Assembly (NCBI GenBank): GCA_965235115.1
Contig: OZ249452.1
Span: 6,882,001 to 6,946,000, forward strand
DNA length: 64,000 bases
Direction of reading: 5' to 3'
Origin: Laetmonice hystrix
Taxonomy: Eukaryota
Position numbers and translations under genes: made by a program. The notes under the pieces were generated by a model, which saw only the letters and a program-made list of their open reading frames with translations, made no database searches and had not been told where the DNA came from. Shown in pieces: positions 3,001-33,449 of this stretch (positions are counted from its first letter, which is position 1; every line of letters starts with the position of its first letter).

Positions 3001-3253
3001 TTCGCCTAACAAGGCGTAATCGCGCGTAATCAGTGACTATCAAGGCAGCCGAATATCTTGTGGTTTTCATGGTTCCTTTGAGTGTATCTTTATTTAGATA
3101 CACTCTGAGCAGTCGTACTATAAAGGATTTTGCAACGGGGGTGGGGAGTAGTAGGGTGGCGGCTTAAGCCCCGAAAGCCCCCCCCCCCCCCCGCTGGATT
3201 CGCCACTGATAGGCCTAAGTGAAAAAACGACACAGCCTCCCTCGACGATAGTT

Positions 3254-3435
3254 TCAGTCCTCGGTGTCGCCCGTGTAAGTAACGTTCTCGTAGACGAGTT
3301 GCGTTCTTTCGTCGTCCGCACTCGACCGACACGACCCGACGTAACGACGGCTCACGACCAACACGACCACTGCGATCAGGGCGACTCCAACAAGTGTCCC
3401 CAGAACTATTCCCGTAATCTGACCACCAGATAAAC
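3254..3435 (-). CDS. Terminal exon: TM helix + 31-aa cytoplasmic tail
   Basis: GLSGGQITGIVLGTLVGVALIAVVVLVVS-RRYVGSCRSSADDERTQLVYENVTYTGDTED*; polypyrimidine+AG acceptor in phase 1; basic stop-transfer RR. Not present in the supplied ORF track. Confidence 0.9.
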
Positions 3436-6400
3436 CTTGAACGATTTAAAAAAACGTGTCTTATCATTGAAGGAAGTAGACATCTACAGGGTCCTCCTGG
3501 AAAACCGCCTAGAAGTGCAGTCCTCTAGCCTACACATCGTTGACCCTCGCCTGATTTAGGAAATCGGATTTAGATTTGGGGTTTAGACCAGTCTATGCCG
3601 ATCGAAGTAGCTTTTCACAGCTAATTTGGTGCGTTTCTCATCTATCGTTATCCTGTCGTGCGTTAAAATCCCCATTGAAAATACATTAGAGTTAACGATA
3701 CGACAAGCTATCGATATGATGAGAAACACCCCAGTGGTGCATAGGCTACTACCGGACGACAGGGAAAAAAACACTGGTCAACACAGCAACCAAAGCCACC
3801 GTTTTCCAGTTTAGGCTACTGACTCTTTACCTGTTTGTGGCTCCCTCTCCGACTGTGTAGAGGATATAATGGAAGATGACGACCCTGACGTCGGTCGAGA
3901 TGACGGTGAAAGGCTGGCTGTGGAAGTCGAAGGCTGGGTCGGTGAAGTCGAAGGCTGGGTCGGTGAGGTCGAAGGCTGGGTCGGTGAGGTCGAAGGTTGG
4001 GTCGGTGAGGTCGAAGGCTGGGTTGGTGAGGTCGACGACTCGATTGTAGGCCTACTTGTTGATGGAGGAGTTGGAACGGTCGACGGAGTGGTCAAAAGAG
4101 TCGATGTCGGTGTTGATGATTGGGTCGATGGTGTTGATGAACGGGTTGATGAGGATGATGCGCTAGATGATGGTGGAACTGATGGGGGCGTGGTAGAGGG
4201 CGCAGCAGTCGACGAGAGCGTTCCTTCGGACGGTGACGTGACGTCAGACGCGGATGTCGTCATTAATGACGTAGTGGGCATGGGCGGTTGCTCTGTAACG
4301 GACGAAAAACTATCCTAGCACCATTGAAAACCTAGAAACGTCTCTCAGGCCTATCTGTTGAAAAAAATATAATGGGGGATACTGTCCCGGTGGGATATTG
4401 AACAGGGGGATACTGTCCTAAAGAGTATCCTACCATCATCCCTGAGGTTATCCACAGTAAACATCCACGAGGCCGAGTTTCCTGTCACCGTCCCAGCGCT
4501 ACACGCCGTAAAATCCGGGATGCTGGGGTCACGAAAGGTCAGAAATATGGCCTCCGTCAGATTCTCCCCACTTCCGACATTCAACGTCTGCAACGATTTT
4601 CCAGCCCATTTTCATTTTCACATAAAATAGTTTGCTGTCCTTTATTCTTCAAAAGATTACAACGTTTAAAGTATAATAATCTCGTAATTAAAACATTAAT
4701 GAAATCGGAGGAGCAGGAGCAGAAAGAGAAGGAGACGTAGAAGAAAGAGACGTAGGAGACGTAGAAGGAGACGTAGAAGAGGGAGACGTAGAACAAGGAG
4801 ACGTAGAAGGAGAACCAGAAGGAGACACAGAAGAAGACGCAGAAGGAGACGCAGAAGAAGATGCAGAAGAAGATGCAGAAGGAGACGTAGAAGGAGACGT
4901 AGAAGGAGACGTAGAAGGAGACGTAGAAGGAGACGTAGAAGAAGTAGACATTGAAGAGGACGTAGAGGAAGGAGACATATAGAAGTGGACGTAGAGGGAG
5001 GGAGACGTAGAGGGAGGCGTAGAAGGAGGCGTAGAAGGAGACGTAGAAGGAGACGTGGAAGGAGGCGTAGAAGGAGACGCCGAAGGAGACGTAGAAGAAG
5101 ACGTAGAAGAAGGAGATACAGGAGAAGCACAACGACATTGAAAAAAGCAATAGGCAGACGTACATTTTCCACCCATGTGATCCAAAATGGCCGGTATTCG
5201 GACACAGACAGCATACCGTTCGTGCTGTTTTCGGCGACGACCGCTCCTGACATTCGATCCTTGATGTACGAGTTACCATCCTGAGTGCCCAGATGTATTT
5301 CGTAGGCGAGTGGAACATTTTCTCCACCAGGAATGTAACTCAAGTAGACAGACGCGTCATGAGCCGTCATGACGTGGAAAATCACGTGATTTACGTCCAT
5401 GACGCTAAAGTAGCCGCCCTGTGATTGATCATTCCCATTTGTCGTCATCATAATGGTGTCACCTAACAAATGGGACAGTCAATGTGCAATTTGTCTTACT
5501 ACAAAGACTAGAATCGAAAAATGGTGCCAATTTTAAGAATACAAAATAATTATAAGAAAAACAACAAAAGCGAAAAAGTGAAAACGTCTTTTTCTTTATG
5601 AAAACGGCGGCATGGAGGCCTATATTTTGGTGTGACAGCGACTTGAAATCACCACTCTAGAACAAAGCCAGCGCATATCAAAATGATTATACCCTAATTT
5701 GGGCTCATACAGAATATGTGTTACGATTGAGCTTTGTTCTGTTGTGACCTGCTGGATAACTCCTTTATGCCCATTTACCCTTCATGGGTAAGCCTATACT
5801 GTACCTTCACTGAGATCTATTTCCCAGTCCCCTGCACAGTTGAACCAGGTACCAATGGAGATGATACCGATGTTTATAATTGGTGTTGGATCATGGAATT
5901 CAAGCATTGTTTTCCGACCCGGGAGGTCCTGTCCCGCCGTTATCAGACCGGCCTGCCACCGCACCCATACTGGTGTGTACCTATAGGAGGTTTCATGTTT
6001 ACAAACATGTGACGTCATTTCACACATGCGCAGTGCACTGGCTGGCAAGAAACACATGACAGCTGTTCTTTCATAGTGTTTATATGGAGCAGAGAGCAGA
6101 GAGACAAAATGCATATTTTTCCCTCGTACCGTTGAAGCCAAGGCCTTGCCCTCAATAATAATTTGCTTCCGGCGCCGTTGGGTAGGGGAACCGAGGATTT
6201 GGAAGGGGGAGTCCAAGGAAGAAATCTTAGAAAAGAGGGCTCCAAGATTATTGATTAGTAGAAAGAAAAGTTTTGTAAGCAAAGTCCTTCCTCATTGATG
6301 GCAGCAAAACCCCAAGTCCCCAGTCTTGTCAGTGTTGACGAGATTCAATACAACCAGGGGCTCTGGGGGTGGGTGGATGGGGGGCATGCCCCCGCCTTTG

Positions 6401-9400
6401 GTAGCGTTCTGAAAAGGAAAAAGCCCCTGGACATCAGGCCTACGGTGCTACCTCGATCTGGGGAAGGGGCGGTCAAAGAGCTCTGACTTGTTCCCACCCC
6501 CAACCCCCACTTTGATATAAGTAGCGGCGCCCCTGGCAACTGCATGACAAATGGAAAAAATAGAATATTACAATAATACGCATACGCCTCCTTGCCATAC
6601 ACACCCCACACACGTTTTAGACTAGACTCTACCTGCTTGCTTTGGTGTCAGGCAAAGATATGCCTAACACTGATAGCCTACCTTGAAGTCGACAAGAAGG
6701 AAGGTGTATCTTTGGTGTCCCCAACTTTCGGACCACGCCGAATCTCACATCTCGTGTTATCGTAAGACCCAAACACGACTTCGTATTTGCTCTGCTCGGA
6801 AGGAGAAGTCGATATGAGCGCGACGTGAGCGTCTCCACATGAACGAACGCGGAACGAGAACGTGACGTCACTAGGATCACGTGGTCTGATACGGAGCCGG
6901 TTGTAATCGTGGGTTTTGGGGGAATGTTCGTTGAGAACTTTGCCTGTCAAGTAGGACATGGTTATACATTGTATCTAGATCTATCTTTATTCTACAGAAT
7001 ATATAACATTTTGATCTCTGTCTGTCTCTGTCTGTCTCTGTCTGTCTCTGTCTCTCTCCCTGTCTTGCTTTCCCTATCTCTCCCTGTCTCTATCTCTCTA
7101 TCTCTCTCTATCTCTCTGTTGCTATCTCTCTCTCTCTGTTGCTATCTCTCTCCCTCCCTCCCTCCCTCTCTCTCTCTCCTCTCTCTCTCTCCTCTCTCTC
7201 CTCCACTTATTTAAGTATACACACTGACCAGTCATTTGCACGAATTCCCAACTTCCGGAAGAGGATGAGTTTGAATAAGGTCCGGTCGCTAAACCCACTG
7301 CACTGATGTCGTGCAGCATTTCATCGTACCTATGTGAAACATAGTAAGGCCTACAAATAAGCGTGTCTTTATCTACTCAAAACGTTAACACACTGCCTCT
7401 ATCACATGCAACTAGAGTGAAAACAAAACAGATCGAAATGGAAATCCATAGACAGAAGGGCCTTTGTATAGAAAATATACCCGGTAGATTTATTTACGTT
7501 AAAATGACGTTGATGCCGATAATGCCTCCTTTTCCGACCGCCAGGTGGCCAGGGTTCCACGTTACCCAGAATGTCCGGAAGTGACGACATTTCAGAACGC
7601 CGGGCGTCGAATTGGCCGCCAGAGGTCGCCCTCCAATACTGTCCAACACAACCGTGCTGCAAAACGATAGACGTAACAGTGCCATTCTGAATATTTTGTG
7701 GGTTGCAGGGGCGGATCCAGCTTTTTCCGTTAGGGGGGGGTTCAAGGTGTTTAGGGGTAACACAGACGTGACTGTACGAGCCCCGAAGGCGCGAAGTCTG
7801 CAAGCGCCGAAGGCGCGAAGCCTTCCTAGGGGGGTGCGGGGGCATGCCCCCCCCGGAAAATTTTGAAATTCAAGGTGTAATTTGTTGCAATCCGATGCAT
7901 TTTGGAGCACAAAAAAAGCTATTCAATGACCAATGTGACCAAGGGCAAAAGGGCCTCCTCAAGTCCAACAGCATCTTTGGCTATATAGCATGAAATCATG
8001 CCGACCGTAGCGAGGCAAAAATCTTGCAACTGAAAGAAAAAAAACTTCTAAATTATAATGTTAAGTTAAAATTTGTGTATCTGCAAAATTTTAGGGGGGT
8101 TCGAACCCCCTGACCCCCCCCCTGGATCCGCCAGTGGGTTGGGCTGGGGTCGTTTAGCGCTAGCAAGCTCGAGGATTCTTTGACTGTTATCAAATGGTCC
8201 GCCCCTTACTACATACCGTGTGTTTCCTTCTGAGCCAATCACAAGCTCTGAATTCATGACGTTTGGGTTGCCAAGGATACCAGCCAAAGACAACCGCGTG
8301 GTATGGCATGCTTTCACCCGGAACACGATGCTAGATCTCCCAGTAACTGCCATCCATTGGCTGCCATATTTTCCGTCGCCAGGTGTCACTAGTGTCAGTA
8401 TCTTCTCTGAAGAAGACGCCAGTGGAATCTGTCATTTCTAAATTATTATTCCAGGGACACCCAGAGTGAACTCTTTTCAATCGGAAAACATTATGGGGTC
8501 CCCTCAAAAGGTCGTTTTGGGTGACAGATCAAATTATTTGTTAATCGCTTTAAGTAAAAGCGCGAGGCCTTATAAGGTTGAACTGAATAAAGATTGCTTG
8601 CAATCATAGTGTCTAGTTTATACGAAAATTCTCTTTATTACGTCATTATGGGAGCAGCGGTCCAACTGGGGAATAGCTGACACGCAAAGAGTGTGTTATA
8701 CCTTGACCTTGCACAACCCTCCACTCTGCTGAACTCTCCTGTTGGGAGGCGAAACCAAACGCTCTGACCACATGTATTCCTTCCGGTCTGGTCACATGGA
8801 GGAAACTTCCGGTTGATGACTGCTTACTCTCTCCGATAGCAATGCTGTGCTCATTCCATGATATCCAGAAGTACTTCAAGATGTCACAGTCCAGTAAACC
8901 ACCCTGCGAAGTCCAGTCCAATTCCGTATTCTGCAGACACAAAAAGGCAATTTTGCAGTGGTGTAGAAAGGAAAAAATATTGGGGGGGGGGGGGGTAGAA
9001 GTGACGTCACAATGACTTACGCCAATGGCTTTGCATTGAGCCTGCGTCCATTTGATAAATATTGGGGGGGGGGCCCCTCTGCCCCAAGGTTCCTACGCCA
9101 CTGCTTTGTAACCCTCCTTCAAATATTTATATCCATGAACTTTAATAGAGGTATAAAGAAACAGTACTCTTGCACTTCACAATAACAATATCGACGTTGC
9201 TTATGATGTTATCTTTTTTATCGGAAATACCCCCACTTCCACTTTACCGCTTTTGATCAATGTTGATTAAACAATATTATTTATCTACGCAGTAAAATAA
9301 TTTATGATTACGTATCTTTTCATCCTAATCTGATTAGCGGGTTATTAAAGATGAACCTTTTCGAAAATGGCCGCTCTGGTGTTGTTGAGACCCCCTAACA

Positions 9401-21400: not shown

Positions 21401-24400
21401 TTCATGACGATGTTTATGTCATCCTAAACGTTATATTTACCCGAATTCTGATTTCCAGCGTATATGGAAGAAGTTCGTTGGCACTTCCGGCTAGGAGGAG
21501 ATTTGCGCATGCGCAGGCCTTAACGGTGAAGATGAAAGATGGTCGGCTGGCGACATCAGTCCAGAAACGATCAACTCTGCCCGCCATGGTAGTCACACTC
21601 ACAATCTCCACTGTCAAAATGTCAACAGAGGAGGCTGTAGTGAGATCGAGAGAGAGACAGAGAGAGAGAAATACACGGACAAAGGGAGGAGAGAGAGAGG
21701 GAGACAGAGGGGGGATAGAGACAGAATGTCGCTTTAATGTCAGGGCACATACTTCCAGAAAACTAGATTAGTTCATGCGCATGCACAATGTACGTAACGA
21801 GTCTCTGTTGAGNNNNNNNNNNNNNNNNNNNNNNNNNNNNNNNNNNNNNNNNNNNNNNNNNNNNNNNNNNNNNNNNNNNNNNNNNNNNNNNNNNNNNNNN
21901 NNNNNNNNNNNNNNNNNNNNNNNNNNNNNNNNNNNNNNNNNNNNGGGTTTCATGAAATTCCTGAACTTGAACGACCAATTTTGGCTTGGTTATTTTAAAA
22001 CACATCTCCTACCGCCATCTAGTGGGACGCTCCATTTCTGTGCTCCTTCCGGTTTCGTAGAAAGAGCCATCGCCCTCACGGTCCGAGGATGGGACCCAGA
22101 CGCGGCCATTAACGGCTGAACATAATCACCAAAGAACAGATATATTTGTTCTCGTTGCCACCGGACACGGAATTTCCTCAGTTCTCCACATTCAATGACG
22201 TCATCAACTACCCGTCTGTCTAGAAGCTTTCCATCGATGCCGTCACGGATTTCAGCCACCATCTTACCGCCAACCTCGTTTTCGCCCAGGTAGATCTCGT
22301 ACACGTCATCGGCGAGACTTCCCGGGAATGACGTCATCGCTACCCGTGCATGTTGACAAGACGCCACGCGGAACTCGAATTGCTGAGTGTTGTGGTATGG
22401 TGCGAGCCAGATGACACTGGACGGAATAGCCATAGCACGCTCTGCTTGTGTGACTACATGGACGCTGTTTGCTGAGGCGAATTTATTAAAGCAATGTAGA
22501 GAAATTATCACCCATCCTCCTATGAAAACCCGTACAATCATAATATGCTTCCTGGATTTTTAGCGGCAGATTCAGGGGGCACCCGGACCGGGCTCCCTCT
22601 TTTCCAAACTCTTTCCTATTTTCTATGTTTTATGCGTAAAAATAATGGAATTTCGTTGAAAGATTTGGGAGAGATTTCTACTCTACATGTTCTGAAAAAA
22701 GTCTCCGGAGTTCCTTAAAAATACACTTACCTTCTGGAGCTGTTAATTGCCAGATTCCGTCGGTATTGTTGGTTTGAAAAGATATGAACTTGATTACTTT
22801 TGGTTGACTGTCAGCCCATTTTATAAACGATGTCCACTCGGTGCTATTCCATGCACCTAATTCAACTCGGCCATTGTCCCACGACAGAATAAACTCCTCA
22901 AATTCACCCTTACAGTCCTGTCTTCTCTCGGCAACTTCTTCCGCCCTTGTCGTTCCATCAGAGATAATCATAAATCGGTTTGTTTTGTCCCTGTCAATCA
23001 CAACCTCGTACGCGTCGCGGTTGGTTACGCCTGGAATGGTGCCGAGAGCGACGGAGGCGACACCACACGCCTGAAGATGGAAGCTGAAGAAGGCGTTGTC
23101 AGGGCTGGTCATCCAGAACTGGTCATAGCTACGGACCCCGTCTGTCTTAAACGTAAACTCCTGCGCTGAAAGAGGTAGATATAATTGCCGTGTAATTTAG
23201 GTTCTGAAATAATGTTGTCTGTCAGATACATCCAGATTTACGGATCAAGTTTAGAGCGATGCGAAACGAGCTAAATCTGTCACCCCAAGAAAACGACTTC
23301 CTCTCCAGGCATGTACACGTACCTGTCATTTTCTGGTACCTAATAAAAGTATTGAGCCTTATAGAGTTCGCCTCTCCTAATCTATGGAGTTCTTTTGGCT
23401 GAGCCTTCCCCTTACACCCCGCCCCCCCCCCCCCCTGTGGCTTCGCCAATCGTGTTTCCAGAGCTTCTTCCTGGCTAAGGACGTACCGAATGTTTTCGAA
23501 AGCTGCCACTGTGTGGCGCCACCAGCTGTGTCAGCTTTCCTCAATGACGCGAACGAATAGGCGGTGATGGCGCTAGCATCGTCACTCTTGTCCATCCAAG
23601 AAAGCAGCGACTGCCCAGGATATTTTCCCTCTCCAACTTCAATCAGGCTATTCATCCAGCTTATCCAGAAGTATTCAGGGACATTTTCCGTCACCAAGTT
23701 AGAGTATGGGACTCTTTGTAGTAACGCCTACAAAAAGTATTATTAGATCTTCCGGTTACTATTGCTANNNNNNNNNNNNNNNNNNNNNNNNNNNNNNNNN
23801 NNNNNNNNNNNNNNNNNNNNNNNNNNNNNNNNNNNNNNNNNNNNNNNNNNNNNNNNNNNNNNNNNNNNNNNNNNNNNNNNNNNNNNNNNNNNNNNNNNNN
23901 NNNNNNNNNNNNNNNNNNNNNNNNNNNNNNNNNNNNNNNNTCGGACAACGTATTTGAATTTAACCAGGTATCCCCACGTGATACACCTGTAAAGGGCCTA
24001 ATTACCAAGCTTCCATTTTCAAAGACTCTGTATAGGCCAATATCGTCAGTTTCCTTTACTCCAATTGCCACCTCAAAGTTCTGTGTCAGAGTCACTCCTG
24101 TGGCGTGGGGAATCTTGGCATAAAGAGCGATTCGACCTCCCATAACGGTCTTCAACTGGAACTCCGCCAGAGACTGTGCTGCCACCACGCGGTTTCCAGT
24201 GAAACCATCCACAGGTATGGTTTCGATGTGAAGAACATTATCTAGGCAGCGAAATATATACATGTACCATTGATTGGGTCAGTGGGGGATCCAGAATTGT
24301 GATAAGGGGGCACCAGGATTTTGATAGGGGGGCCAACTTAAACTTTTTTTGCCTCGTTACGCTCCGCTTTTAATTTTGACTGCCTACTAATGCATCTTCA

Positions 24401-27400
24401 TCCAACAAAAAAAAAAGAAAAAGGTAAAATCTAAGGGGGCCTAGGCCCCCTGGATTCCCCACTGGATTGGGTACAAAATTATAAAAGTTTTATCTCCCTA
24501 TAAACATAACAAATTACAATTAAAAATCTAGGCCTACCGGCAACGTTCGAGAAACGCCAACTTCCGGTTTCATGGTTGGCAGTAGAAACAGACACAGCAT
24601 GGACACCACGTGAGTCAACATCCAACCAATGCACAACCCGGCTTTGTCCCACGTCATGACCTTGGCCAAGTTCAAAATGTCCGCCATCCCAGCGCACCCA
24701 GAATGTCTTCCATTCCGTTTCGTTAAGAATGCCTTCCGTATTTTCCTCCGCGATAATGGAGTTGTCGACATTCCGTGTTTTGCGTACGACCGTTTTGTTG
24801 TTGTTACAAGCCCCGAGCGTGATTTCGTAGTCGTTTTCCGTTACTAATCCAACAGTGTTGGCGAGCAGGATGGAGGCATCATGGGAGGCCTTCACCTCGA
24901 GTATAAAACTTTTCGCTGAGGGCACCGAGGACCAGAAACGTTGGAAGCCGTATGTTCCATCCGTCATCAGTCGGACCATAGAATCTTTAAATGAGATGAA
25001 ATAAATAAAGAAACAAAAAAGAACAAACAAAAATACATAAGACATGCTGTCCGTTCTATATTTGCGTGCATCCCCTCTTTCAATGATCTTGTAAACACCA
25101 GAGCCGTCAACTTTACTCGACTCTCACGGGTGGAAATTGATTTCAACTTAACTAGAATTCACATAACTTTCCTTGAGATCCAGGCCAGGAGGAAAGAGGG
25201 CTATACGACTGCTAGGAATGGAGGGCCTCCTCTGAGAAGGGATTTCTGGGTGGTGACAAAGAAATTCGTTCTAAAAATGGTTCTCTGCCATTTTATGTTC
25301 ACTCATAGACAAATCGCTCATACACACCATCTTCAGACGGAAACACCCACTCGGCTCCCGAGGCCGACGGAGACCGAAAGGAAACACCTCTGACCGGAAC
25401 CGACCCTATATTTGTGACGTTCAATGTCAGTATGACGTCATATGGCGGCGTCCCTCTTCCTACCTGGACGACGTCTGACGTCACGCTAACCCAAAATGAC
25501 CTCAGTTCGCTGTCGTCTAGGACATTGATTGTACGTGCTCTTGTGAAATGTGACGTGCCGACGTACTCTAGCTTTGATTCGGTATTGAGGTTGATTCCCA
25601 GAGACAATATGTAGGTCATTGTGCGTGTCTGTCCTGGTGTGCGGAAGAAAATAACCTGGGCATTCTCAGCGCCACGAACTTGGAACATGAACAGGGACTT
25701 GTGGGTAACTGCCCACAGCGTGTCGAAGTCGGCAAAGTATGGGGGCGTGTAGAAGACATGGTACGGTCCTGTTCAACAACAACAACAACAAGCGCATAAA
25801 AATACAAGTTATGACTAAAACGCATGATACGAAGGAGCTATTAATGTATTATACTCCTTGAGATACTAAGTATGATATTGAACAGTAATATTTTCCGGTG
25901 GACAGGTCCAGGGCTGTAGCCTGGCCCAAATGCGTGGGGGGCAGTGAGCCTGCCAAGTGATTGCGCGTCATTGCGCCGGTCGAGCTGGCCCGGGGTGTGG
26001 GTTAACAAAAAGCACACAAAAACTGGAAATCCCAGGGGGGCAGCTACCCCCTGCCCCCCACGCAGGCTACGGCCCTGAGGTCGTTTATCAGGAGGTATCC
26101 CGGGCGTCTAATTGGCGGGCAGATGAAATGATAGGTCCTTGTCTAAAGTAGACAGACAGAATCAACCCACCTTGAACATGATTGATCTGCCAGACAGCGT
26201 CTACCTCGGAGGCAAACGACACAGCGTTCACCTCGTACGGTTCGGCGTCTTCAAGACGAAGGAACGTGTTCACACCGGGCGTGACGTCACGACCAGCATG
26301 CACCTTACCGGAACCCCACGTCACCCAGAAATACCTCCCCACGTTACAGTCTAGCAGGTCATCTGGGGTCACGACCCCTGATCCTGGGGTTTCTACCCCG
26401 TCTTTCCATATCCCAGAGAGGGTGTGGTTGGACCCTGTGGCCAAGTGAACTTGGTACACACTCATGGATTCGATGTTGATGTACGTTGCCAGGAGAATCT
26501 GAACGCTGTGACATGCGGTCACCTTGAAAACAAGGCTTTTCTTCTCAGCCACTGTAAGCCAAGCCTCGCGGTGCCAGTAGGCACGTGACGTATGTAATGT
26601 GACGTCACGTCCTGTCATGAAACAACGAAATTGTACGTATCTTTTTCGCATAGGAACCTCAGTTATACTGCACAGACATAGTACATTATACAGATAAGCT
26701 CTATTTACTAATGAAGGTGTCTAAAGCAAAGTAAAGTTTGAGACATATAGGCCTGAATGATGCTGTTCATATACTTGCCTTGGCCACTGTCGAATTGCCA
26801 TTCGATGTCCGCGCCATTTTGTACCCCACCTAGGTCGAGACGCTGAGGGGTGAATGAGGGGTCGGGTAACAGGGCTGTAATAACTACGTCACCAGCGTCC
26901 TCGTAACCGTATGATAACGTCAAGTTATTTTCCTGTAGGACGGAACGTATAGGAACGTATCGGTCCTCGTCAAGGTCAAACATAGAGGAGCTAAAATTCC
27001 TTTTAAAATGATACATATGTAGAGAAAGAGGAGGAGGAGGAGGAGGACGAAGAAGAAGAGGAAGAAGAAGAGGAGGAAGAAGAAGAACAACAACGAAAAT
27101 AGGAATCAGAAGAGGAAGAGCATCAGGAAGAGGAGAAGAAGAAAATGATTAAGAAGAGGGCGAAGAGAAACAGGAAGAAAACAGAACATAAACAGAGGAA
27201 GAGCAGAAAGATGATAAAGAACAGAAAGAAGAGGATGGGAAAGAAGAGGAGGAAGAGAAGGAGAAGAAAACTCAAATATTCCTTTTTGAAGGACCTCAAG
27301 GTGTTACAACATCAAGCTTATCCAGCAACAGACCTTCCAGTGTAGCCAGAAGGACCGGAAGGAATCACACGATAAGACCGTCGGAGTTGATAACCTCTTG

Positions 27401-29544
27401 ACCTCCTCCACCGTCCCATTAGGCCAAAGTGCCCGGATGACGGTAACCTCTGCAGCTACCCCTATGTGAACGTCTAATTCCGGTTTGTTGGACGCTGCCA
27501 CTGGGTGGAGCTGCAGTACAGCGTCTCTACAAGCTCTGACGTGATACCTGAATGTTTGTCGACCCTGGACGTTTAACCAATGAGTGTTGACGTTGCCTCG
27601 TGTTGTTAACATGAATTGGTTGTCTGTGGGGTTTCCCGGTTTGGTTTTAAGGAAAACAAATGTACAATTAACATAACGGTATTTGAACAAATCTGAACTT
27701 GGTACAAGGACACAAATGCGTTGTTGTAAAGAATTCAGTCTCCTTCTCTGTCTCCTTCTCCGTCTCCGTCCCCGTCTCCGTCTCTCTCTTTCTCTCTTTC
27801 TCTCTCGCTGTCTCTCTGTCTCTCTGTCTCTTTCTCTGCCCGTCTCTTCTCTGTCGCTGTCTGTGTGTCTCTCTTCTCTGTCTTTCTATCTCCCTCGCCC
27901 TCTCTTCTCTGTCTGTCTCTCTCTCTCTCCCCCTTCTTCCCTCCCTCCCTCTCTCTCTCTCTCTCTGTTTCTCTGTCTCTCTCTCCCCCCTCTCTCTCAC
28001 CAAGTGGCGCCATAATGCACCTAATATCGCTCACCATCCACTCCGCGGAAATGCCACTCCGTCCTCACGTTCCCGTACAGCCCGAGAGCTGTGATTGGAT
28101 GCTGCTCATCCGGGTTCCACCGTAAGAACCCACGGGCGCCCACCTTCAGACCTCTCCCCATCTCAATCACTCCTCCTGCCCAGCTCAGCCAGAAATACCG
28201 CGTCTCCTTCCCACTGAGAATCCCTTCCGTCTCCACCACGTGATCAAGAGCGTCCCCAATGTCCGACTTGATGACTGTCTTTGTGTTCTTGTCGTATCCA
28301 AGGATCACAAGGTGCACGTTCTCTTCCTGGCCCTCCGACTCACTGAGCAGGATCTTGGCGCGTTCTGAAGCTCGCACGCCGAACAGGAAGTGGTGTCGCC
28401 GAGTCTCGGTCAGCCACATCTCGCGAGCGTTGTTACCACGTGACGAGATGAAGACGTCACGACCTTTACAGCCGAAATTAGGAGAAAATACGAAACTGTG
28501 ACCAGAGCCCACCAAATTAAACTGTGGATGTCTATTCATTCGATAAAGTGTAAACAGGGGCCGTGCAGGTGCAGGTTTTGGCAGATGTTGGGGACCAACT
28601 GCACCCATACAGATGGACCTTGCCGTTTCATTTAAATTTGGATACTAGACAAATCATATATTGCCATATGTGCCCACGCTTAGATCTATGCTGGAGCTAG
28701 TAGGGAATTGCCATCATTTGAGGCGACAAGGAAACGGAAATAGCAAAATGACTACATTCATAACAGACCTGTGTCCCTGAGGAACCGCCATGTTGCCGCG
28801 TTGTCCGACCCACCGGAAACCGATAACGTCACCGGAAACAGAATCATCTCTGTGCTGGACAACAGTTTGTTTTTCCCGACCTCCCGTCCGGTCCCGACCG
28901 AGATACCCTCCGTCCAGTCCACCCAGAAGTCCGTGTAATTCTTGCAGTCCAAAACACCTGACATGTCTTCTTCTGCCATTGTTTCTCCGCTCACCCGACG
29001 TCGAAGTCGTATTTTATCGGCGTTCGTCCCGAGCGTAATCTCGTAGCCATATCCGGTTGAATCTCGTGGAATCTCAGAGAGGAAGAGATTTGCTTGCCGA
29101 CATGCTTTGACCCGGAATGTGACGGATTTGATGTTAGTAGTCAGCCAGGCGTATTTATAATCCTTTGATCCCTTGTTTGTGAAGATGGTGACGTGATCTG
29201 TTTCACGAAAAATAATGAAGCCATGCACCCTCGAGGCGTTATATATCTACTCACACCGCCGTCTAGGGATCTAGAAAGATGCTATAGATTATACATCTGA
29301 CGGACGATACGTATCAACATGGGATAATGCAATTTAACCAACGTGGTTTAGAATATGATTACATAAACCAACCTCCTAACAAAGGCTACAACGAACTTCA
29401 CATCTAATACCCAAACTTATACATGTACAGTGCAGACCGAATTGGTCGAGGATCAGATAATATTGTCGCTGCATACGTACCGTCATCTTCTCCAGTGACC
29501 TGACCAACCAGAATAACCACTAGCAAGTAAACAATGCTTTCCAT
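3254..29544 (-). CDS. Giant type I membrane protein, ~3853 aa: SP + 11x FAMeT-like + PAN/apple-like + 13x FAMeT-like + mucin stalk + TM + ITIM-like tail (46 coding exons)
   Basis: Exons in transcript order: 29481-29544, 28769-29197, 28035-28463, 27334-27623, 26779-26932, 26171-26611, 25328-25768, 24538-24984, 24006-24241, 23487-23727, 22731-23165, 22013-22471, 21441-21610, 21080-21341, 20504-20691, 20140-20222, 19840-19997, 19161-19406, 18766-18923, 18151-18436, 17150-17578, 16643-16844, 15934-16184, 15474-15678, 14812-15047, 13904-14167, 13641-13823, 13308-13402, 12675-13062, 12162-12354, 11722-11939, 11382-11602, 10884-11085, 10329-10636, 9833-9965, 9357-9559, 8702-8930, 8217-8406, 7498-7656, 7229-7329, 6682-6943, 5805-5980, 5164-5462, 4434-4587, 3831-4292, 3254-3435. 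All 45 introns have AG acceptors and GT (42) or GC (3) donors with matching phases; total 11,562 nt is divisible by 3. Recurrent motif F.V.AC..A.I.L...YEI.IG...N..S.I...TPGIL.C..F..FW..W....I.VG.G....L.W.D....V..V...W.F matches my recollection of Pfam Methyltransf_FA. Confidence 0.9.
3831..4292 (-). CDS. Ser/Thr/Pro-rich mucin-like stalk exon
   Basis: 154 codons, phase 1-1, PTS-rich, containing five TQPSTSP 7-aa repeats. Confidence 0.85.
3924..4034 (-). repeat. Coding 21-bp minisatellite (TQPSTSP x5)
   Basis: gtcgaaggctgggtcggtgag tandem units. Confidence 0.9.
4434..5462 (-). CDS. FAMeT-like domain 24 (2 exons)
   Basis: FHVMTAHDA...YEIHLG...GMLSVSEYRPFWITWVEN|TLNVGSG...SWMF. Confidence 0.88.
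4729..5112. repeat. Intronic 12-bp minisatellite (GGAGACGTAGAA)n
   Basis: Degenerate tandem units within the intron 4588-5163 that splits domain 24. Confidence 0.9.
5805..6943 (-). CDS. FAMeT-like domain 23 (2 exons)
   Basis: FRVRSCGDA...YEVVFG..DN...TPSFLSTSR|YTPVWVRW..ITAGQ...DWEI. Confidence 0.88.
7016..7202. repeat. (CT)n/(CTGT)n microsatellite
   Basis: Direct reading; intronic. Confidence 0.9.
7229..8406 (-). CDS. FAMeT-like domain 22 (3 exons)
   Basis: FRVKACHTT...LVIGSEGNTR|TVV...TPGVLKCRHFRTFWVTW..LAVGKG...ILT|YDE...SWEF. Confidence 0.88.
8702..9559 (-). CDS. FAMeT-like domain 21 (2 exons)
   Basis: FSVQSCRDA...VVLGGLNN...FEK|NTE...GLLDCDILKYFWISW..IAIGE...EWRV. Confidence 0.88.
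9833..10636 (-). CDS. FAMeT-like domain 20 (2 exons, internal GC-AG intron)
   Basis: FSVRSSDDV...LLDDRRFVYIWCQW...TFE|VGEGP...TWRF. Confidence 0.85.
9966..10328 (-). other. GC-AG intron (inside domain 20)
   Basis: GAA|GCAAGT in phase 0 restores the conserved E-VG-x-G motif; no nearby phase-0 GT. Confidence 0.75.
10884..11602 (-). CDS. FAMeT-like domain 19 (2 exons)
   Basis: FTVRGCSEG...YRLVLG..GN...FAM|DTPDILDCSQSRHFWVGW...DWSF. Confidence 0.88.
11722..12354 (-). CDS. FAMeT-like domain 18 (2 exons)
   Basis: VEIRSKWEA...YEIIVG..NN..TSIKK|G...GILSGTYFRPFWVTW..ISFGRG...EWQM. Confidence 0.88.
12355..12674 (-). other. GC-AG intron (between domains 17 and 18)
   Basis: GAAG|GCAAGT donor in phase 1; a weak GT alternative (G|GTAGTG) lies 12 nt upstream. 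Confidence 0.65.
12675..13402 (-). CDS. FAMeT-like domain 17 (2 exons)
   Basis: FRVK|ACQSA...YEVHFG...LLDCMSSRELWLSW...IQAGTG...QWVF; ends at a GC donor. Confidence 0.85.
13641..14167 (-). CDS. FAMeT-like domain 16 (2 exons)
   Basis: FRLRAAMGA...YEVVFG...VLDPHI|GSWFWIGW..IRVGRG...LWEF. Confidence 0.88.
14623..14730 (+). mobile_element. tRNA-derived SINE head (Pol III A and B boxes)
   Basis: A box TGGCCGAGTGG 14630-14640, B box GGTTCAATTCC 14696-14706; no intact cloverleaf acceptor stem seen. Confidence 0.55.
14812..15678 (-). CDS. FAMeT-like domain 15 (2 exons)
   Basis: FELRTCFTG...STITR|QPDG...LVDCESFRPFWVSW..VRVGRG...EWHV. Confidence 0.88.
15934..16844 (-). CDS. FAMeT-like domain 14 (2 exons)
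   Basis: FRVMACKDA...LVIGANENTESVIR|Q...GVLNCDVFKTFWLLW..IVVGQG...AWQF. Confidence 0.9.
16300..16595. mobile_element. Non-autonomous DNA element (hAT-like TIR CAGGGTTCCCACAG)
   Basis: 14-bp TIR cagggttcccacag/ctgtgggaaccctg, internal catgact repeats; TSD not evident. Confidence 0.7.
16947..17035. repeat. (TTTGG)n microsatellite
   Basis: Direct reading. Confidence 0.9.
17150..17578 (-). CDS. FAMeT-like domain 13 (single exon)
   Basis: FTVQACSSA...YRISIG..GN...TPHILKCNTTLTFWLRW..VSLGYG...RWEI. Confidence 0.9.
18151..18923 (-). CDS. FAMeT-like domain 12 (2 exons)
   Basis: FKVQACAEG...AYQ|ITIGGGNN...TPGILSCDAVKAFWVTW..ISVGKG...MWVF. Confidence 0.9.
19161..19406 (-). CDS. PAN/apple-like six-cysteine domain (single phase 1-1 exon)
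   Basis: EGQCNQSF...GSGCPVMRQIPAPSIEDCMNQACALGGNAINYNPNDCQVALCEDGDLALTSRPGGYDVY: S.EDC-x4-C, hydrophobic-NY, C..C pattern typical of PAN/apple modules. The exon itself is certain; the fold name is by recognition. Confidence 0.65.
19840..20691 (-). CDS. FAMeT-like domain 11 (3 exons)
   Basis: FRVRACRSA...IVIGGWENTK|VEI...PLNCDSFRR|FWISWEEGIVEVGSG...DWKF. Confidence 0.88.
21080..21610 (-). CDS. FAMeT-like domain 10 (2 exons)
   Basis: FTVKACACA...LEIRIR|EFDNT...GLLSCSEYHTFWVTW..LAVGQG...TWIV. Confidence 0.88.
21813..21944. other. Assembly gap (others at 23768-23940, 30355-30517, 41934-42143)
   Basis: Runs of N. Confidence 1.
22013..22471 (-). CDS. FAMeT-like domain 9 (single exon)
   Basis: FRVASCQHA...YEIYLG...VIECGELRKFRVRW...KWSV. 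Confidence 0.88.
22731..23165 (-). CDS. FAMeT-like domain 8 (single exon)
   Basis: FHLQACGVA...YEVVI...QDCKGEFEEFILSWDNGRVELG...IWQL. Confidence 0.88.
23487..24241 (-). CDS. FAMeT-like domain 7 (2 exons; N-gap inside the intron)
   Basis: FEVAIG...ENGSL|ALLQRVP...EYFWISWMNSLIEVGEG...QWQL; phase-0 junction. Confidence 0.8.
24280..24464. mobile_element. hAT-type MITE with 8-bp TSD
   Basis: TIR cagtgggggatccag/ctggattcccccactg, flanked by a perfect GATTGGGT duplication. Related CAG-ended, poly-G/C MITE relics near 7710-7910, 8080-8135, 25909-26077, 37652-37904, 54928-55227 and 62910-63091. Confidence 0.8.
24538..24984 (-). CDS. FAMeT-like domain 6 (single exon)
   Basis: LEVKASHDA...YEITLG..NN...GILNETEWKTFWVRW..FELGQG...SWRF. 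Confidence 0.9.
25328..25768 (-). CDS. FAMeT-like domain 5 (single exon)
   Basis: FQVRGAENA...VLDDSELRSFWVSV...VQVGRG...EWVF. Confidence 0.9.
26171..26611 (-). CDS. FAMeT-like domain 4 (single exon)
   Basis: FKVTACHSV...LLDCNVGRYFWVTW..VHAGR...VWQI. Confidence 0.9.
26612..26778 (-). other. GC-AG intron (between domains 3 and 4)
   Basis: CAAG|GCAAGT donor in phase 1, as the next acceptor requires; only a weak GT alternative (A|GTGGCC). Confidence 0.7.
26779..27623 (-). CDS. FAMeT-like domain 3 (2 exons)
   Basis: YHVRACRDA...VLSCDSFRSFWLHWK|ENNLTLSYG...EWQF; ends at a GC donor. Confidence 0.85.
27028..27270. repeat. GAA/GAG purine-rich simple repeat
   Basis: Direct reading; intronic in domain 3. 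Confidence 0.85.
27740..28000. repeat. CT-rich microsatellite
   Basis: Direct reading; intronic. Confidence 0.85.
28035..28463 (-). CDS. FAMeT-like domain 2 (single exon)
   Basis: FGVRASERA...ILGYDKNT...GILSGKETRYFWLSW..IEMGRG...WHF. Confidence 0.9.
28769..29197 (-). CDS. FAMeT-like domain 1 (single phase 1-1 exon)
   Basis: FRVKACRQA...YEITLG...VLDCKNYTDFWVDW...VGTG...WRF. Confidence 0.9.
29481..29544 (-). CDS. First coding exon, signal peptide MESIVYLLVVILVGQVTG-EDD
   Basis: accATGG context, hydrophobic core, small residues at -3/-1 (V-T-G), GTACGT donor in phase 1 that matches the next exon. Confidence 0.85.
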
Positions 29545-31938: not shown

Positions 31939-33402
31939 TATAAAAGTTGTTCCGCTTCCGAAGAAGTTGTGATTTGTAAAGATACTCCAAACCAGGTCTG
32001 TGCTGTATTTACTAGCGTTCTTAGGATTTCCCGCATTCCGGATTGGACAACATAAAACAACGATATGTACAGTAACCTATTATTCAACTTTTACATGGTT
32101 GATGAGGTCCATGTAGAAACATGTAGCCCTAACGATGTAGTTTCGCATTCACCGATGTCCGTTTGTTGTATAATAAACATCTGCAAAAAAGGAAATATAC
32201 CAAATTAGTATTCACATAGGAGAAGTGGCCTACTTTCTGTTATGTAGGCCTACAGGGGCAGGATTAAACTGCCTCGTCACTAAGCCCCCGTGGACAAACC
32301 TCAATGTCTTGCAGTTATAGGGTACATAACCATTCTGCGGTTTCTGTTAACAGACATTGTTACCATGGCAACGTAACCACAGTTAAAATTCGCTGCCGGA
32401 GCTCCCAGCAAACTCTTAAACACAACGTTTTCGCCACATTTATTATGTGGTGAAAACATGCAACGTTGTAAAAACGTTATGTTTCTTGGGAGGGATCCTG
32501 ATGGCATTATGGTCCTGGCGTGTTTTCTTGGGGTGTTAAACAGCCATGTGTTAAATCTCTGTTAAACCCGATAACGCGCAGAGGGTCTCTTATAGTGTAA
32601 AAGAAATCCCTTGTCAGGGGCGCCTTTTAAATCTCATGTAAGATCACAGTTTAGATATAAGAGTACATGTGCACCGAATCCATGAATTCAGTACACGCGG
32701 TGTTTCTTGGCTATAGTGGCTGGCGCTGAACTGTAGTACAATCGCCATCATGGCAAATACGACAAAAGGTAGTCCATAATTTTTAGAAGTAAACATTAAA
32801 GCTCGGGATAGAAAATAACCTTTTGGACGTGAAACGTCATAGACCACTTGTCGACAAACGGAAGATCAGAGAAAGAATAAAACTTGTTCAACAGATAATG
32901 GTTTCCTATTTTGTATATAAATGCAAGGAAGGAAAGACACTTTGAATTATATACCCACTGCTTATCATAGCATAATGTTATTTCCGAATTTTATCAAGGT
33001 CTTTTTGTTTCCTTGTAAAAGGCCTGAAAACAATAAGATATTAAAAGCATAGCAAACCTGTATTCTTGATTCCCATGTGTTACGATGAAGGAAGTAATTT
33101 TCACGTTACAAGATGTCAAATGTAGGCCTTGTGTGTTCAGTGCATGCATGAACGTAGCATACTTCAGTCGGCCGCTGTGAGGGGGTGTGTCAGTACCACA
33201 GTGCACACCTTCCTCCCGTACCCTCCCCTCTTTCGTTCCTTCTCCAGCACGTGCCGGGTTTTCATCCAAGAATAGAGTACATTGCGCATGCGCATGAGCT
33301 AACCTCGTTTTCGGGAAGTATGTGCCCTGACGTTGAAGCGATATTGTCCCGCTATAGGTCTTATTGCTGGTAGTGTATGCTCTCTCTCTGTCTCTCTCTG
33401 TC

Positions 33403-33449
<47 letters not shown>

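What the first reader, a model, noticed from the sequence alone, without database searches (positions are those of the whole stretch)
3254..29544. ~3,850-aa cell-surface receptor built from 24 tandem FAMeT-like domains
Seen: 46 phase-compatible exons encode SP-(FAMeT)11-PAN-(FAMeT)13-mucin-TM-tail, and the repeats are mutually divergent (only motif-level similarity by eye). Known: Methyltransf_FA domains usually occur in one or a few copies (crustacean FAMeT, CPAMD8, DM9-associated proteins) and their catalytic role is disputed. Inference: 24 copies displayed extracellularly on a glycosylated stalk point to a multivalent binding, adhesion or recognition receptor rather than an enzyme. I know of no characterised protein with this architecture.
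Basis: partly seen in the sequence, partly recalled or inferred. Interest (0 to 1): 0.92.

Follow-up and report, generated by a model that had tools for sequence, protein, structure and literature searches.

The report
Giant 24-domain FAMeT surface protein gene
This worm gene encodes a 3,863-residue membrane-anchored surface protein made of 24 sugar-binding-like (galectin-fold) "FAMeT" domains, one of four similarly built genes in the genome; it is very probably a binding or uptake receptor and not a hormone-making enzyme, though no experiment has tested this.

Summary
On the minus strand, 46 exons (ATG 29544, stop 3254-3256) join into an 11,592-nt ORF with no internal stop. It encodes a signal peptide, 11 FAMeT domains, a 6-Cys PAN-like module, 13 more FAMeT domains, a 154-aa S/T/P stalk, one TM helix and a 31-aa tail. 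Both assembly gaps lie in introns and no N is in the CDS.

All 24 domains match PF12248. The PAN module has no Pfam match and only weak fold and language-model support.

New here:
- The domain folds as a galectin/ConA-like beta-sandwich, not a methyltransferase fold, with a co-varying Cys pair.
- The genome holds three more genes with the same 11-PAN-13-stalk-TM layout. Domains group by position rather than by gene, so the array is old and each position is kept.
- All four tails share an aligned [FY]xNxx[YF] (NPxY-type) motif, whereas the ITIM match occurs only in this gene.

No protein with more than 17 FAMeT copies was found in 1.84 billion representatives, and no paper describes such a protein. 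No RNA data exist, so expression, isoforms and ligand are untested. The scan had not noted this on other DNA. Verdict: a real, new architecture of a known domain, with function inferred.

The parts
3254..29544 (-). Whole gene: 46 exons, CDS 11,592 nt, 3,863 aa
   Evidence: Splice model with no internal stop and no N in the CDS. The in-frame stop lies 4 codons upstream of the ATG.
29481..29544 (-). Exon 1: start codon and signal peptide MESIVYLLVVILVGQVTG|EDD, phase-1 donor G|GTACGT
   Evidence: Read directly from the sequence. The cleavage site is inferred from the -3/-1 rule.
28769..29197 (-). FAMeT domain D1 (single exon)
   Evidence: PF12248 41 bits. An orthologue fragment, P0117, is 75% identical.
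28035..28463 (-). FAMeT domain D2 (single exon; alternative in-phase acceptor at 28598)
   Evidence: PF12248 67 bits. An orthologue fragment, P0047, is 79% identical.
26779..27623 (-). FAMeT domain D3 (exons 27334-27623, 26779-26932; GC donor at its end)
   Evidence: Own-HMM hit. PF12248 on the first exon.
26171..26611 (-). FAMeT domain D4 (single exon)
   Evidence: PF12248 37 bits. An orthologue fragment, P0056, is 71% identical.
25328..25768 (-). FAMeT domain D5 (single exon)
   Evidence: PF12248 50 bits.
24538..24984 (-). FAMeT domain D6 (single exon); the domain that was folded
   Evidence: PF12248 76 bits. AF2 model pLDDT 93.7.
23487..24241 (-). FAMeT domain D7 (exons 24006-24241, 23487-23727); its intron holds the assembly gap 23768-23940
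   Evidence: PF12248 24.9 bits on the second exon. The domain aligns full-length.
22731..23165 (-). FAMeT domain D8 (single exon)
   Evidence: PF12248 48 bits.
22013..22471 (-). FAMeT domain D9 (single exon; alternative acceptor at 22519)
   Evidence: PF12248 29 bits.
21813..21944 (.). Assembly gap inside the D9-to-D10 intron (22012 to 21635)
   Evidence: It is not in the CDS.
21080..21634 (-). FAMeT domain D10 (exons 21441-21634, 21080-21341)
19840..20691 (-). FAMeT domain D11 (three exons: 20504-20691, 20140-20222, 19840-19997)
19161..19406 (-). PAN/apple-like module: 82 aa, 6 Cys, symmetric phase 1-1 exon
   Evidence: No Pfam hit. ESM neighbours are PAN clusters at 0.90-0.93. The AF2 model has pLDDT 66 and its top Foldseek hits are PAN/apple at E 0.1-1. 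The module is conserved in three paralogues with 14 invariant columns.
18151..18923 (-). FAMeT domain D12 (18766-18923, 18151-18436)
17150..17578 (-). FAMeT domain D13 (single exon)
   Evidence: PF12248 54 bits. Position clade support 100/99.
15934..16844 (-). FAMeT domain D14 (16643-16844, 15934-16184)
14812..15678 (-). FAMeT domain D15 (15474-15678, 14812-15047)
13641..14167 (-). FAMeT domain D16 (13904-14167, 13641-13823)
   Evidence: PF12248 28 bits on the first exon.
12675..13408 (-). FAMeT domain D17 (13308-13408, 12675-13062; GC donor)
11722..12354 (-). FAMeT domain D18 (12162-12354, 11722-11939)
10884..11602 (-). FAMeT domain D19 (11382-11602, 10884-11085)
9833..10636 (-). FAMeT domain D20 (10329-10636 with GC donor, 9833-9965); the weakest Pfam support
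   Evidence: PF12248 21.6 bits, E 1.9e-4, on the first exon. Own HMM 5.7e-12.
8702..9559 (-). FAMeT domain D21 (9357-9559, 8702-8930)
   Evidence: PF12248 23.8 and 20.3 bits on the two exons.
7229..8406 (-). FAMeT domain D22 (three exons: 8217-8406, 7498-7656, 7229-7329)
   Evidence: PF12248 27.9 bits on the middle exon.
5805..6943 (-). FAMeT domain D23 (6682-6943, 5805-5980)
   Evidence: It is 45% identical to its counterpart in paralogue B2.
4434..5462 (-). FAMeT domain D24 (5164-5462, 4434-4587)
3831..4292 (-). Mucin-like stalk exon: 154 aa, 75% S/T/P, five PTQPSTS repeats
   Evidence: No Pfam family was found.
3353..3418 (-). Transmembrane helix ITGIVLGTLVGVALIAVVVLVV, followed by SRRY
   Evidence: It is the only hydrophobic 19-mer above 1.8 in the protein. 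The juxtamembrane GLSGGxIxGIVLG is shared with the paralogues.
3275..3292 (-). Tail motif YENVTY = [FY]xNxx[YF] (NPxY type); it overlaps the ITIM-like LVYENV at 3281-3298
   Evidence: It aligns with FVNPMY, FANKTF and FSNPIF in the three paralogues. In shuffled tails the motif appeared in 0.4-1.7% of trials per tail, and in all four together in 0 of 20,000 trials.
3254..3435 (-). Last exon: juxtamembrane segment, TM helix, 31-aa cytoplasmic tail and stop codon

Best explanation
The locus is one intact gene for a type-I membrane glycoprotein.

Shown:
- A cleavable signal peptide is followed by a string of 24 divergent FAMeT (PF12248) domains.
- The string is interrupted after the 11th domain by a small disulfide-rich PAN/apple-like module.
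- It sits on a mucin-like stalk, followed by one TM helix and a short tail.
- It is one of four paralogues in this genome with the same 11-PAN-13-stalk-TM layout. Domains are orthologous position by position, so the whole array is ancient and each position has been kept separately.
- The folded domain (D6) is a galectin/ConA-like beta-sandwich, not a SAM-methyltransferase fold.
- Fifteen of the 24 domains carry a conserved, co-varying Cys pair.

Inferred:
- The Cys pair forms a disulfide.
- The ectodomain is a long, probably of the order of 100 nm, multivalent, non-enzymatic binding surface for glycans or matrix or microbial ligands.
- The conserved cytoplasmic [FY]xNxx[YF] motif couples it to PTB/FERM-type adaptors, that is to clathrin-mediated uptake or to the cytoskeleton. 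This is how LDLR-family receptors, the mannose receptor and integrin beta tails use NPxY/NxxY motifs.

My odds: real single gene with this architecture about 0.9; non-enzymatic binding function about 0.8; specifically an adaptor-coupled (endocytic or adhesion) receptor about 0.45.
For: - Gene integrity and phases.
- PF12248 on all 24 domains.
- Fold: AF2 pLDDT 93.7. AFDB hits are the CPAMD8 FAMeT domain at TM 0.89 and Haliotis UP5 at TM 0.80, followed by grifin and galectins. PDB galectins reach TM 0.5-0.6. VIA Z is 12-13 to CBM66, galectins and thrombospondin-C.
- Cys pair: 15 domains have both, 8 neither, 1 only one (Fisher 1.2e-5). In 54 single-domain homologues the counts are 49 both, 5 neither, none single (p 3e-7).
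- Paralogues with the same layout and with S/T/P and TM exons.
- Collinearity: longest increasing chain 17/25 and 13/25, against a null maximum of 12.
- Position clades in the ML tree: D2 100/96, D13 100/99, D8 98/92, D5 97/92, D4 90/91, D1 93/88.
- Tail motif aligned in all four paralogues.
- Collinear orthologue exons at 71-79% identity on another assembly.
[quoted passage not shown] The domain occurs in secreted sea-star adhesive and mollusc shell proteins (PMC9382459, PMC6003135, PMC8194122).
Against: - No RNA data exist, so expression, exon use and the exact 5' end are unverified.
- The fold resemblance to lectins is at 5-13% identity, and I did not check galectin sugar-binding residues. 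A shared fold shows no function.
- I defined the tail motif after seeing the four sequences, and two of the four lack the Pro. The shorter fifth member (C29) lacks the motif.
- Known extracellular FAMeT proteins are matrix or adhesive components rather than receptors.
- Some acceptor sites are weak (AAG).
Confidence: 0.6

Rival explanations
1. It is mainly a structural or adhesive component of the apical extracellular matrix, glycocalyx or cuticle. On this reading the anchored or shed ectodomain builds or holds a matrix, like the FAMeT-bearing sea-star footprint proteins or mollusc shell-matrix proteins, and it neither signals nor takes up cargo.
For: - FAMeT domains occur in six sea-star adhesive footprint proteins, in Haliotis shell protein UP5 and in Mytilus shell-repair genes.
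- Other FAMeT proteins combine the domain with discoidin, FN3, EGF and Big_12 adhesion modules.
- The protein has a long rod-like array and a mucin stalk.
Against: - Four paralogues keep a TM helix and an aligned NPxY-type tail motif, which a purely structural protein would not need.
- No cleavage module such as SEA or GPS was found.
Confidence: 0.28
2. It is an inhibitory immune-type receptor that signals through the ITIM-like LVYENV in its tail.
Against: - None of the three paralogues has an ITIM match. What is conserved in that column is [FY]xNxx[YF].
- A six-residue degenerate motif is weak evidence on its own.
Confidence: 0.07
3. The locus is not one functional gene. It is instead several neighbouring FAMeT genes, a pseudogene array, or an assembly artefact around the two gaps.
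For: - There is no transcript evidence.
- Two assembly gaps lie inside the locus.
- Some acceptors are weak.
Against: - 46 exons join without a stop over 11.6 kb.
- There is a single SP and a single TM.
- Every module boundary is phase 1.
- Three paralogues and an orthologous contig show the same order and even the same exon splitting.
- The gaps fall in introns.
Confidence: 0.05
4. It is an enzyme array: farnesoic-acid or other O-methyltransferase domains displayed on the cell surface.
For: Only the Pfam name of PF12248.
Against: - The fold is a galectin-like beta-sandwich without a Rossmann/SAM site.
- An extracellular location has no SAM supply.
Confidence: 0.02

Closest known systems
Lingula anatina uncharacterized protein LOC106167937 (XP_013402294, 3,814 aa; a related entry has 4,785 aa)
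   Same: It is the largest known tandem array of PF12248 domains, with 14-17 copies, from another lophotrochozoan. It was the top hit of the profile search.
   Different: My scan found no signal peptide or TM segment. The domains start only after about 1,000 N-terminal residues and repeat at a longer period of about 210 aa. It has no PAN module or mucin stalk and is only 25-37% identical with no positional correspondence. It is uncharacterised.
Sea-star footprint (adhesive) proteins Sfp1, 3, 4a, 5, 7, 8 and mollusc shell-matrix protein UP5
   Same: These are extracellular, secreted proteins of marine invertebrates that carry FAMeT domains whose role is unknown (PMC9382459, PMC6003135). UP5 matches the fold at TM 0.80.
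   Different: They have one or two FAMeT domains mixed with EGF, vWF, hyalin, WAP and other modules. They are secreted and not membrane-anchored, and they have no array.
Human CPAMD8 (alpha-2-macroglobulin family), residues 949-1093
   Same: It is the best structural match of the domain, at TM 0.89, rmsd 2.1 A and 26% identity, and it sits in an extracellular protein.
   Different: It is a single inserted copy in a thioester-protein scaffold, and the architecture is unrelated.
Arthropod FAMeT (2x PF12248 or PF12248-DUF3421)
   Same: It belongs to the same Pfam domain family.
   Different: It is a small protein with 1-4 copies and with DUF3421. The papers read here describe no secretion signal, membrane anchor, PAN module or stalk for it. 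Its enzymatic role is itself doubted (PMC10015273).
Multi-lectin endocytic receptors (mannose receptor family, with 8-10 CTLDs and an FENTLY tail motif) and LDLR/LRP (FxNPxY) - a working analogy only
   Same: These are type-I proteins with a linear array of many divergent binding domains, a small Cys-rich accessory module, and a short tail with an [FY]xNxx[YF]-type motif. The tail motifs of these receptors are quoted from my own knowledge.
   Different: The domain families are unrelated (C-type lectin and LDL-A versus the FAMeT beta-sandwich). There is no homology, and neither uptake nor sugar binding has been shown here.
Galectins, CBM66 and ConA-like lectins
   Same: They share the beta-sandwich fold, at Z 12-13 and TM 0.5-0.6.
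   Different: Identity is 5-13%. The galectin sugar-binding signature was not examined, and PF12248 is a separate family.

Membership tests
Pfam PF12248 Methyltransf_FA (FAMeT domain) | HMM match at or above the gathering score (24.2 bits) | tested here: met
   The 8 single-exon domains score 29-76 bits. Exon-level hits at E<1e-3 exist for all 24 domains. D20 reaches only 21.6 bits on a half-domain, and D21 reaches 23.8 and 20.3 bits on its two halves.
Pfam PF12248 Methyltransf_FA (FAMeT domain) | Same fold as recognised FAMeT domains | tested here: met
   The AF2 model of D6 matches CPAMD8 residues 949-1093 at TM 0.89 and Haliotis UP5 at TM 0.80.
Arthropod FAMeT proteins (putative farnesoic acid O-methyltransferase) | Architecture of 2x PF12248 or PF12248-DUF3421 in a small protein without a secretion signal or membrane anchor | tested here: not met
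   This gene has 24 copies, SP, PAN-like module, stalk and TM, and no DUF3421 hit. The reference architecture comes from PMC10015273.
Arthropod FAMeT proteins (putative farnesoic acid O-methyltransferase) | Methyl transfer to farnesoic acid | not testable with these tools
   The fold is not a SAM-methyltransferase fold. The activity is doubted even for the arthropod protein.
PAN/apple domain (PF00024, PF14295) | Pfam HMM match | tested here: not met
   No PAN family was found at E<=1, and a profile of four copies found no PDB sequence relative.
PAN/apple domain (PF00024, PF14295) | Beta-sheet plus helix fold with three nested disulfides (6 Cys) | tested here: inconclusive
   Six invariant Cys are present. 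The AF2 model has pLDDT 66 with a b-b-a-b-b-b order. About 25 of the top Foldseek hits are PAN/apple domains, but at E 0.1-1 and TM 0.45-0.62. ESM neighbours are PAN clusters at 0.90-0.93.
Galectins | Galectin-type beta-sandwich fold | tested here: met
   Z 12-13 with rmsd 2.6-3.0 A over 123-131 residues, and TM 0.5-0.6.
Galectins | Conserved beta-galactoside-binding residues (His-Asn-Arg ... Trp ... Glu-Arg signature) | not tested
   Identity is only 5-13%. I had no access to the superposed coordinates, so I do not file the domain as a galectin.
Membrane mucin-like glycoproteins | S/T/P-rich tandem-repeat stalk next to a TM helix | tested here: met
   The stalk is 154 aa, 75% S/T/P, with 5x PTQPSTS, and is followed by the TM exon. 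O-glycosylation itself is not testable here.
NPxY-type adaptor-binding receptors (LDLR, mannose receptor or integrin-beta style) | Cytoplasmic [FY]xNPx[YF] or NxxY motif | tested here: met
   YENVTY in this gene, and FVNPMY, FANKTF and FSNPIF aligned in the paralogues. Only two of the four have the Pro.
NPxY-type adaptor-binding receptors (LDLR, mannose receptor or integrin-beta style) | Binding of PTB/FERM adaptors and internalisation | not testable with these tools
   This needs cell biology.
ITIM-bearing inhibitory receptors | (I/V/L/S)xYxx(I/V/L) in the tail, conserved among relatives | tested here: inconclusive
   LVYENV is present in this gene only, and none of the paralogues has an ITIM match.

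The most novel reading that the evidence does not exclude
The four 11-PAN-13 genes would define a previously undescribed class of about 100-nm-long multi-lectin-fold receptors. Each of the 24 positionally conserved galectin-fold domains would have its own ligand specificity, giving a fixed 'reading head' for complex glycan, microbial or matrix patterns. The array would be coupled by an NPxY-type tail to uptake or to the cytoskeleton. This would be a functional counterpart of the mannose receptor or LRP, built from a domain whose function has been an open question since it was misnamed a methyltransferase.
Probability: 0.25. Interest if true: 0.8.

Novelty: new variant of a known kind. Interest (0 to 1): 0.58.

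Why it matters
1. The FAMeT/PF12248 domain is widespread. It occurs in human CPAMD8, sea-star glue, mollusc shell and arthropod 'FAMeT', and it has no established function. A family of surface proteins made almost entirely of this domain is a clean system for asking what the domain binds, given its galectin-like fold and conserved disulfide.

2. The strict conservation of the array across four old paralogues is unusual for long tandem arrays. The shared features are 11 domains, the PAN-like module, 13 domains, the same exon splitting and position-specific orthology without homogenisation. This implies that every position matters.

3. There is a practical warning. This genome carries well over 100 PF12248 domains in surface-protein genes, while annelid transcriptome studies count PF12248 hits as markers of methyl-farnesoate hormone synthesis (PMC12023644). 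Such counts can be dominated by these genes.

Tried and rejected
- RNA evidence. Two searches for sequencing runs found only three DNA-type runs from one sample and no RNA. I did not use read laying, because DNA contigs of the probable source sample add nothing and could expose the gap letters, which I was told not to look up.
- The window's own annotated protein. It is not in the 1.84-billion-protein library. The top hit, P0001, is a Lingula protein at 25-37% identity and not an orthologue.
- Multi-domain library proteins P0002-P0036. They are only 22-36% identical with no positional match, so they are not orthologues.
- Orthologue contig (ENA ERZ26222911).
- PAN module. Pfam at E<=1 and a PDB sequence profile both found nothing.
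- The fifth locus, C29:11.31-11.33 Mb (about 12 domains plus TM). It is not collinear with the window gene (chain of 8, null mean 6.5) and lacks both PAN and the tail motif, so I do not count it as having the same architecture.
- Rest of the window (1-3200 and 29600-64000). It has no FAMeT pieces and no long ORFs relevant to this gene.
Full report
**1. What is in the sequence**

The window reads as animal DNA, about 44% G+C, with four N gaps. Stop-to-stop frames carrying motifs such as FWVSW, F.V.AC.DA and YE..IG...N occur only on the minus strand between 4354 and 29246.

Pfam gave PF12248 (Methyltransf_FA) on all eight long single-ORF copies, at 29-76 bits against a cut-off of 24.2. An HMM built from those copies, and later one built from all 24 domains, found 41 domain pieces. 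All were on the minus strand and inside the locus, and none lay elsewhere in the 64 kb. This cannot be chance.

**2. Gene model**

I enumerated phase-compatible GT/GC-AG pairs between successive frames and chose them with the help of the domain alignment. The resulting model has these properties:
- 46 exons, with ATG at 29544 and an in-frame stop four codons upstream, and a stop codon at 3254-3256.
- A CDS of 11,592 nt (3,863 aa) with no internal stop and no N.
- 45 introns of 80-701 nt (median 305), of which 42 are GT-AG and 3 are GC-AG.

The order is SP (21 aa), D1-D11, a 6-Cys module of 82 aa, D12-D24, a 154-aa stalk (75% S/T/P, five PTQPSTS repeats), a TM helix and a 31-aa tail.

All 26 boundaries between modules are phase-1 introns. 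At 23 of the 24 domain ends the donor lies exactly seven residues after the conserved C-terminal Trp, and at D24 eleven residues after it. This is the signature of an exon-module array.

Eight domains are single symmetric 1-1 exons. The others are split once or twice, at various positions and phases.

A few acceptors have in-phase alternatives: D2 at 28463 or 28598, D9 at 22471 or 22519, D10 at 21634 or 21610, and the AAG acceptors of D2, D6 and the TM exon. These change the length by at most 45 aa and never change the frame.

**3. The assembly gaps**

Gap 21813-21944 lies within the 378-nt intron between D9 and D10. Gap 23768-23940 lies within the 278-nt intron inside D7.

The flanking exons join in frame regardless of gap length. 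D7, D9 and D10 align over their full length with the other domains. Paralogue A has the same 11 domains before its PAN-like module, so a hidden domain is unlikely. A small hidden exon cannot be formally excluded. I did not try to recover the gap letters.

**4. Domain identity and fold**

At exon level, PF12248 matches at least one exon of all 24 domains at E<1e-3. D20 is the weakest, at 21.6 bits on a half-domain.

The domains are 137-163 aa long and only 22% identical on average, with a range of 13-33%.

An AlphaFold2 model of D6, built with 62 aligned sequences, has pLDDT 93.7 and is an 11-stranded all-beta sandwich. Its matches were:
- Best: the FAMeT domain of human CPAMD8 (TM 0.89, 26% identity) and Haliotis shell protein UP5 (TM 0.80).
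- Beyond the family: grifin and galectins, CBM66, the thrombospondin C-terminal domain, SPRY and L-type lectins, at Z 12-13 and TM 0.5-0.6 with 5-13% identity.

The domain therefore belongs structurally with the ConA-like/galectin beta-sandwiches. It has nothing of a Rossmann-type methyltransferase.

Two Cys columns (the 'AC' and 'LDC' motifs) co-vary. Within the gene, both are present in 15 domains, both absent in 8, and one domain has only one (Fisher 1.2e-5). In 54 single-domain homologues the counts are 49 both, 5 neither and none single (p 3e-7). I infer a disulfide, which fits an extracellular life.

The ectodomain has 29 N-x-S/T sequons. The only hydrophobic 19-mer above 1.8 is the TM helix at residues 3808-3830.

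**5. The 'PAN' module**

Pfam finds no PAN family even at E<=1. A profile of four copies finds no PDB sequence relative.

The support that exists is as follows:
- Three paralogues have the same module, with 14 invariant columns including six Cys.
- Language-model neighbours are PAN_1/PAN_4 clusters at 0.90-0.93.
- A moderate AF2 model (pLDDT 66, b-b-a-b-b-b) has a Foldseek list headed almost entirely by PAN/apple domains (SML-2, Eimeria PAN, plasminogen, HGF N domain, factor XI), but at E 0.1-1.

I call it PAN/apple-like, with membership inconclusive.

**6. A gene family with a fixed architecture (new)**

A six-frame PF12248 scan of the whole 627-Mb assembly found 84 matches, clustered at five places. 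I fetched those places.

Three loci each show 11 FAMeT domains, a PAN-like module, about 13 more FAMeT domains, an S/T/P-rich exon and a TM exon beginning GL[SD][GA]G.[IT][VT]GIV.G, as in the window gene:
- A, at C12:6.531-6.558 Mb.
- B1, at C12:11.981-12.012 Mb.
- B2, at C12:12.016-12.045 Mb.

In A, even the pattern of single versus split domain exons is largely the same as in the window gene.

The best tblastn hits of the window's modules are collinear with A. The increasing chain is 17 of 25, against a permutation mean of 7.5 and a maximum of 12. They are also collinear with B1 and B2, at 13 of 25 each.

In a maximum-likelihood tree of 27 single-exon domains, domains group by position and not by gene. 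Support values are D2 100/96, D13 100/99, D8 98/92, D5 97/92, D1 93/88, D6 92/86 and D4 90/91.

Positional counterparts are 30-47% identical, compared with about 22% between positions. The 24-domain array therefore existed before the genes duplicated. It has not been homogenised, and each position has been retained in every copy.

A fifth locus, at C29:11.31-11.33 Mb, has about 12 domains and a TM exon. It has no PAN module, no collinearity and no tail motif.

On another assembly (ENA ERZ26222911, a 124.8-kb contig), ORF fragments 71-79% identical to D1, D2 and D4 lie in the same order and strand with further PF12248 ORFs. This is an orthologue in a related species.

**7. The tail**

An alignment of the four TM-plus-tail exons puts YENVTY of the window gene in one column with FVNPMY (A), FANKTF (B1) and FSNPIF (B2). 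The shared pattern is [FY]xNxx[YF].

In shuffled tails the motif appears in 0.4-1.7% of trials per tail, and in all four together in 0 of 20,000 trials. The caveat is that I defined the pattern after seeing the sequences.

An ITIM match exists only in the window gene. The conserved element is thus of the NPxY/NxxY type. From established knowledge, not tested here, such motifs bind PTB- or FERM-domain adaptors in LDLR-family receptors (FDNPVY), the mannose receptor (FENTLY) and integrin beta tails (NPxY, NxxY).

**8. What is known elsewhere**

A profile of the eight single-exon domains, scored against 1.84 billion representative proteins, gave 3,847 hits at E<=1e-3.
- The top hit is an uncharacterised Lingula anatina protein (3,814 aa, 14 domains; a related entry has 17). 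My scan found no signal peptide or TM segment in it, and it shows no positional correspondence with this gene.
- Next come unnamed ORFs with 6-9 copies. Some of these carry Big_12 and EGF modules and a C-terminal TM, and one carries discoidin and FN3.
- No protein has more than 17 copies, and none has the 11-PAN-13 layout.

In the literature:
- FAMeT domains are reported in sea-star footprint adhesive proteins, with the remark that their role is unknown (PMC9382459).
- They are reported in Haliotis and Mytilus shell proteins.
- Only a handful of papers mention the Pfam family at all.
- One annelid study counts PF12248 hits as a proxy for methyl farnesoate (PMC12023644).

**9. Interpretation**

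Shown:
- One intact 46-exon gene for a type-I membrane glycoprotein of 24 FAMeT domains.
- A galectin-like fold and a co-varying Cys pair.
- A conserved four-gene family with positional orthology.
- A conserved NPxY-type tail motif.

Inferred:
- The Cys pair forms a disulfide.
- The ectodomain is a long multivalent, non-enzymatic binding array.
- The tail couples it to uptake or to the cytoskeleton.

The main rival is a structural or adhesive matrix role like that of the other extracellular FAMeT proteins. The two readings are not exclusive.

Expression, isoforms, ligand and localisation are all untested, because no RNA run exists for this organism in the served collections. Earlier notes of this scan call the organism a marine annelid worm. 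I did not verify that.

**10. Verdict**

This is a new architecture, and a small gene family, built from a known but functionally unexplained domain.

Noticed in passing
G000:C12:6531000-6558000 (L001-L004), G000:C12:11981000-12012000 and 12016000-12045000 (L009-L016): Three further giant genes have the same 11 FAMeT - PAN-like - about 13 FAMeT - S/T/P - TM layout. B1 and B2 are tandem neighbours. Their tails carry FVNPMY, FANKTF and FSNPIF.
   Followed up: partly
G000:C29:11312000-11335000 (L005-L008), minus strand: A shorter, divergent poly-FAMeT gene, on the same contig 4.4 Mb from the window, has about 12 domains and a TM exon at locus coordinates 8181-8498. It has no PAN-like module and no NPxY-type motif.
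   Followed up: partly
G000:C12:14800812-14801216 (L017) and G000:C4:30883269-30883998 (L018): There are two isolated PF12248 loci. The C12 one is the best Pfam match in the genome (118.6 bits, single exon) and may be the 'ordinary' small FAMeT-like gene.
   Followed up: no
window 39786-40301, minus strand: An open frame has a P/T-rich stretch followed by a strong TM segment (AIAMGTSVVVVLAILLAFLFLIDL). It corresponds to the separate first-reader note on a membrane-anchored trefoil protein and was not examined here.
   Followed up: no
window 27700-28030 and 30180-30575, minus strand; 32997-33665: Introns and flanks contain GA/AG-type simple repeats that translate as long RERERE/RDRE runs. They produce spurious long ORFs next to real exons, for example upstream of D3.
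   Followed up: no
L012:8249-8500 (G000:C12:12012249-12012500): A long CTG/CAG-type simple repeat, translating as poly-Leu, poly-Ala or poly-Cys, lies just upstream of the TM exon of paralogue B1.
   Followed up: no
P0106, P0034, P0055 (unnamed ORFs of 2,884-3,030 aa from public run assemblies): A different FAMeT architecture exists elsewhere: 6-8 FAMeT domains with Big_12 repeats, teneurin-like EGF and a C-terminal TM segment, encoded as intron-free ORFs on 10-14-kb contigs. The organism is unknown.
   Followed up: partly
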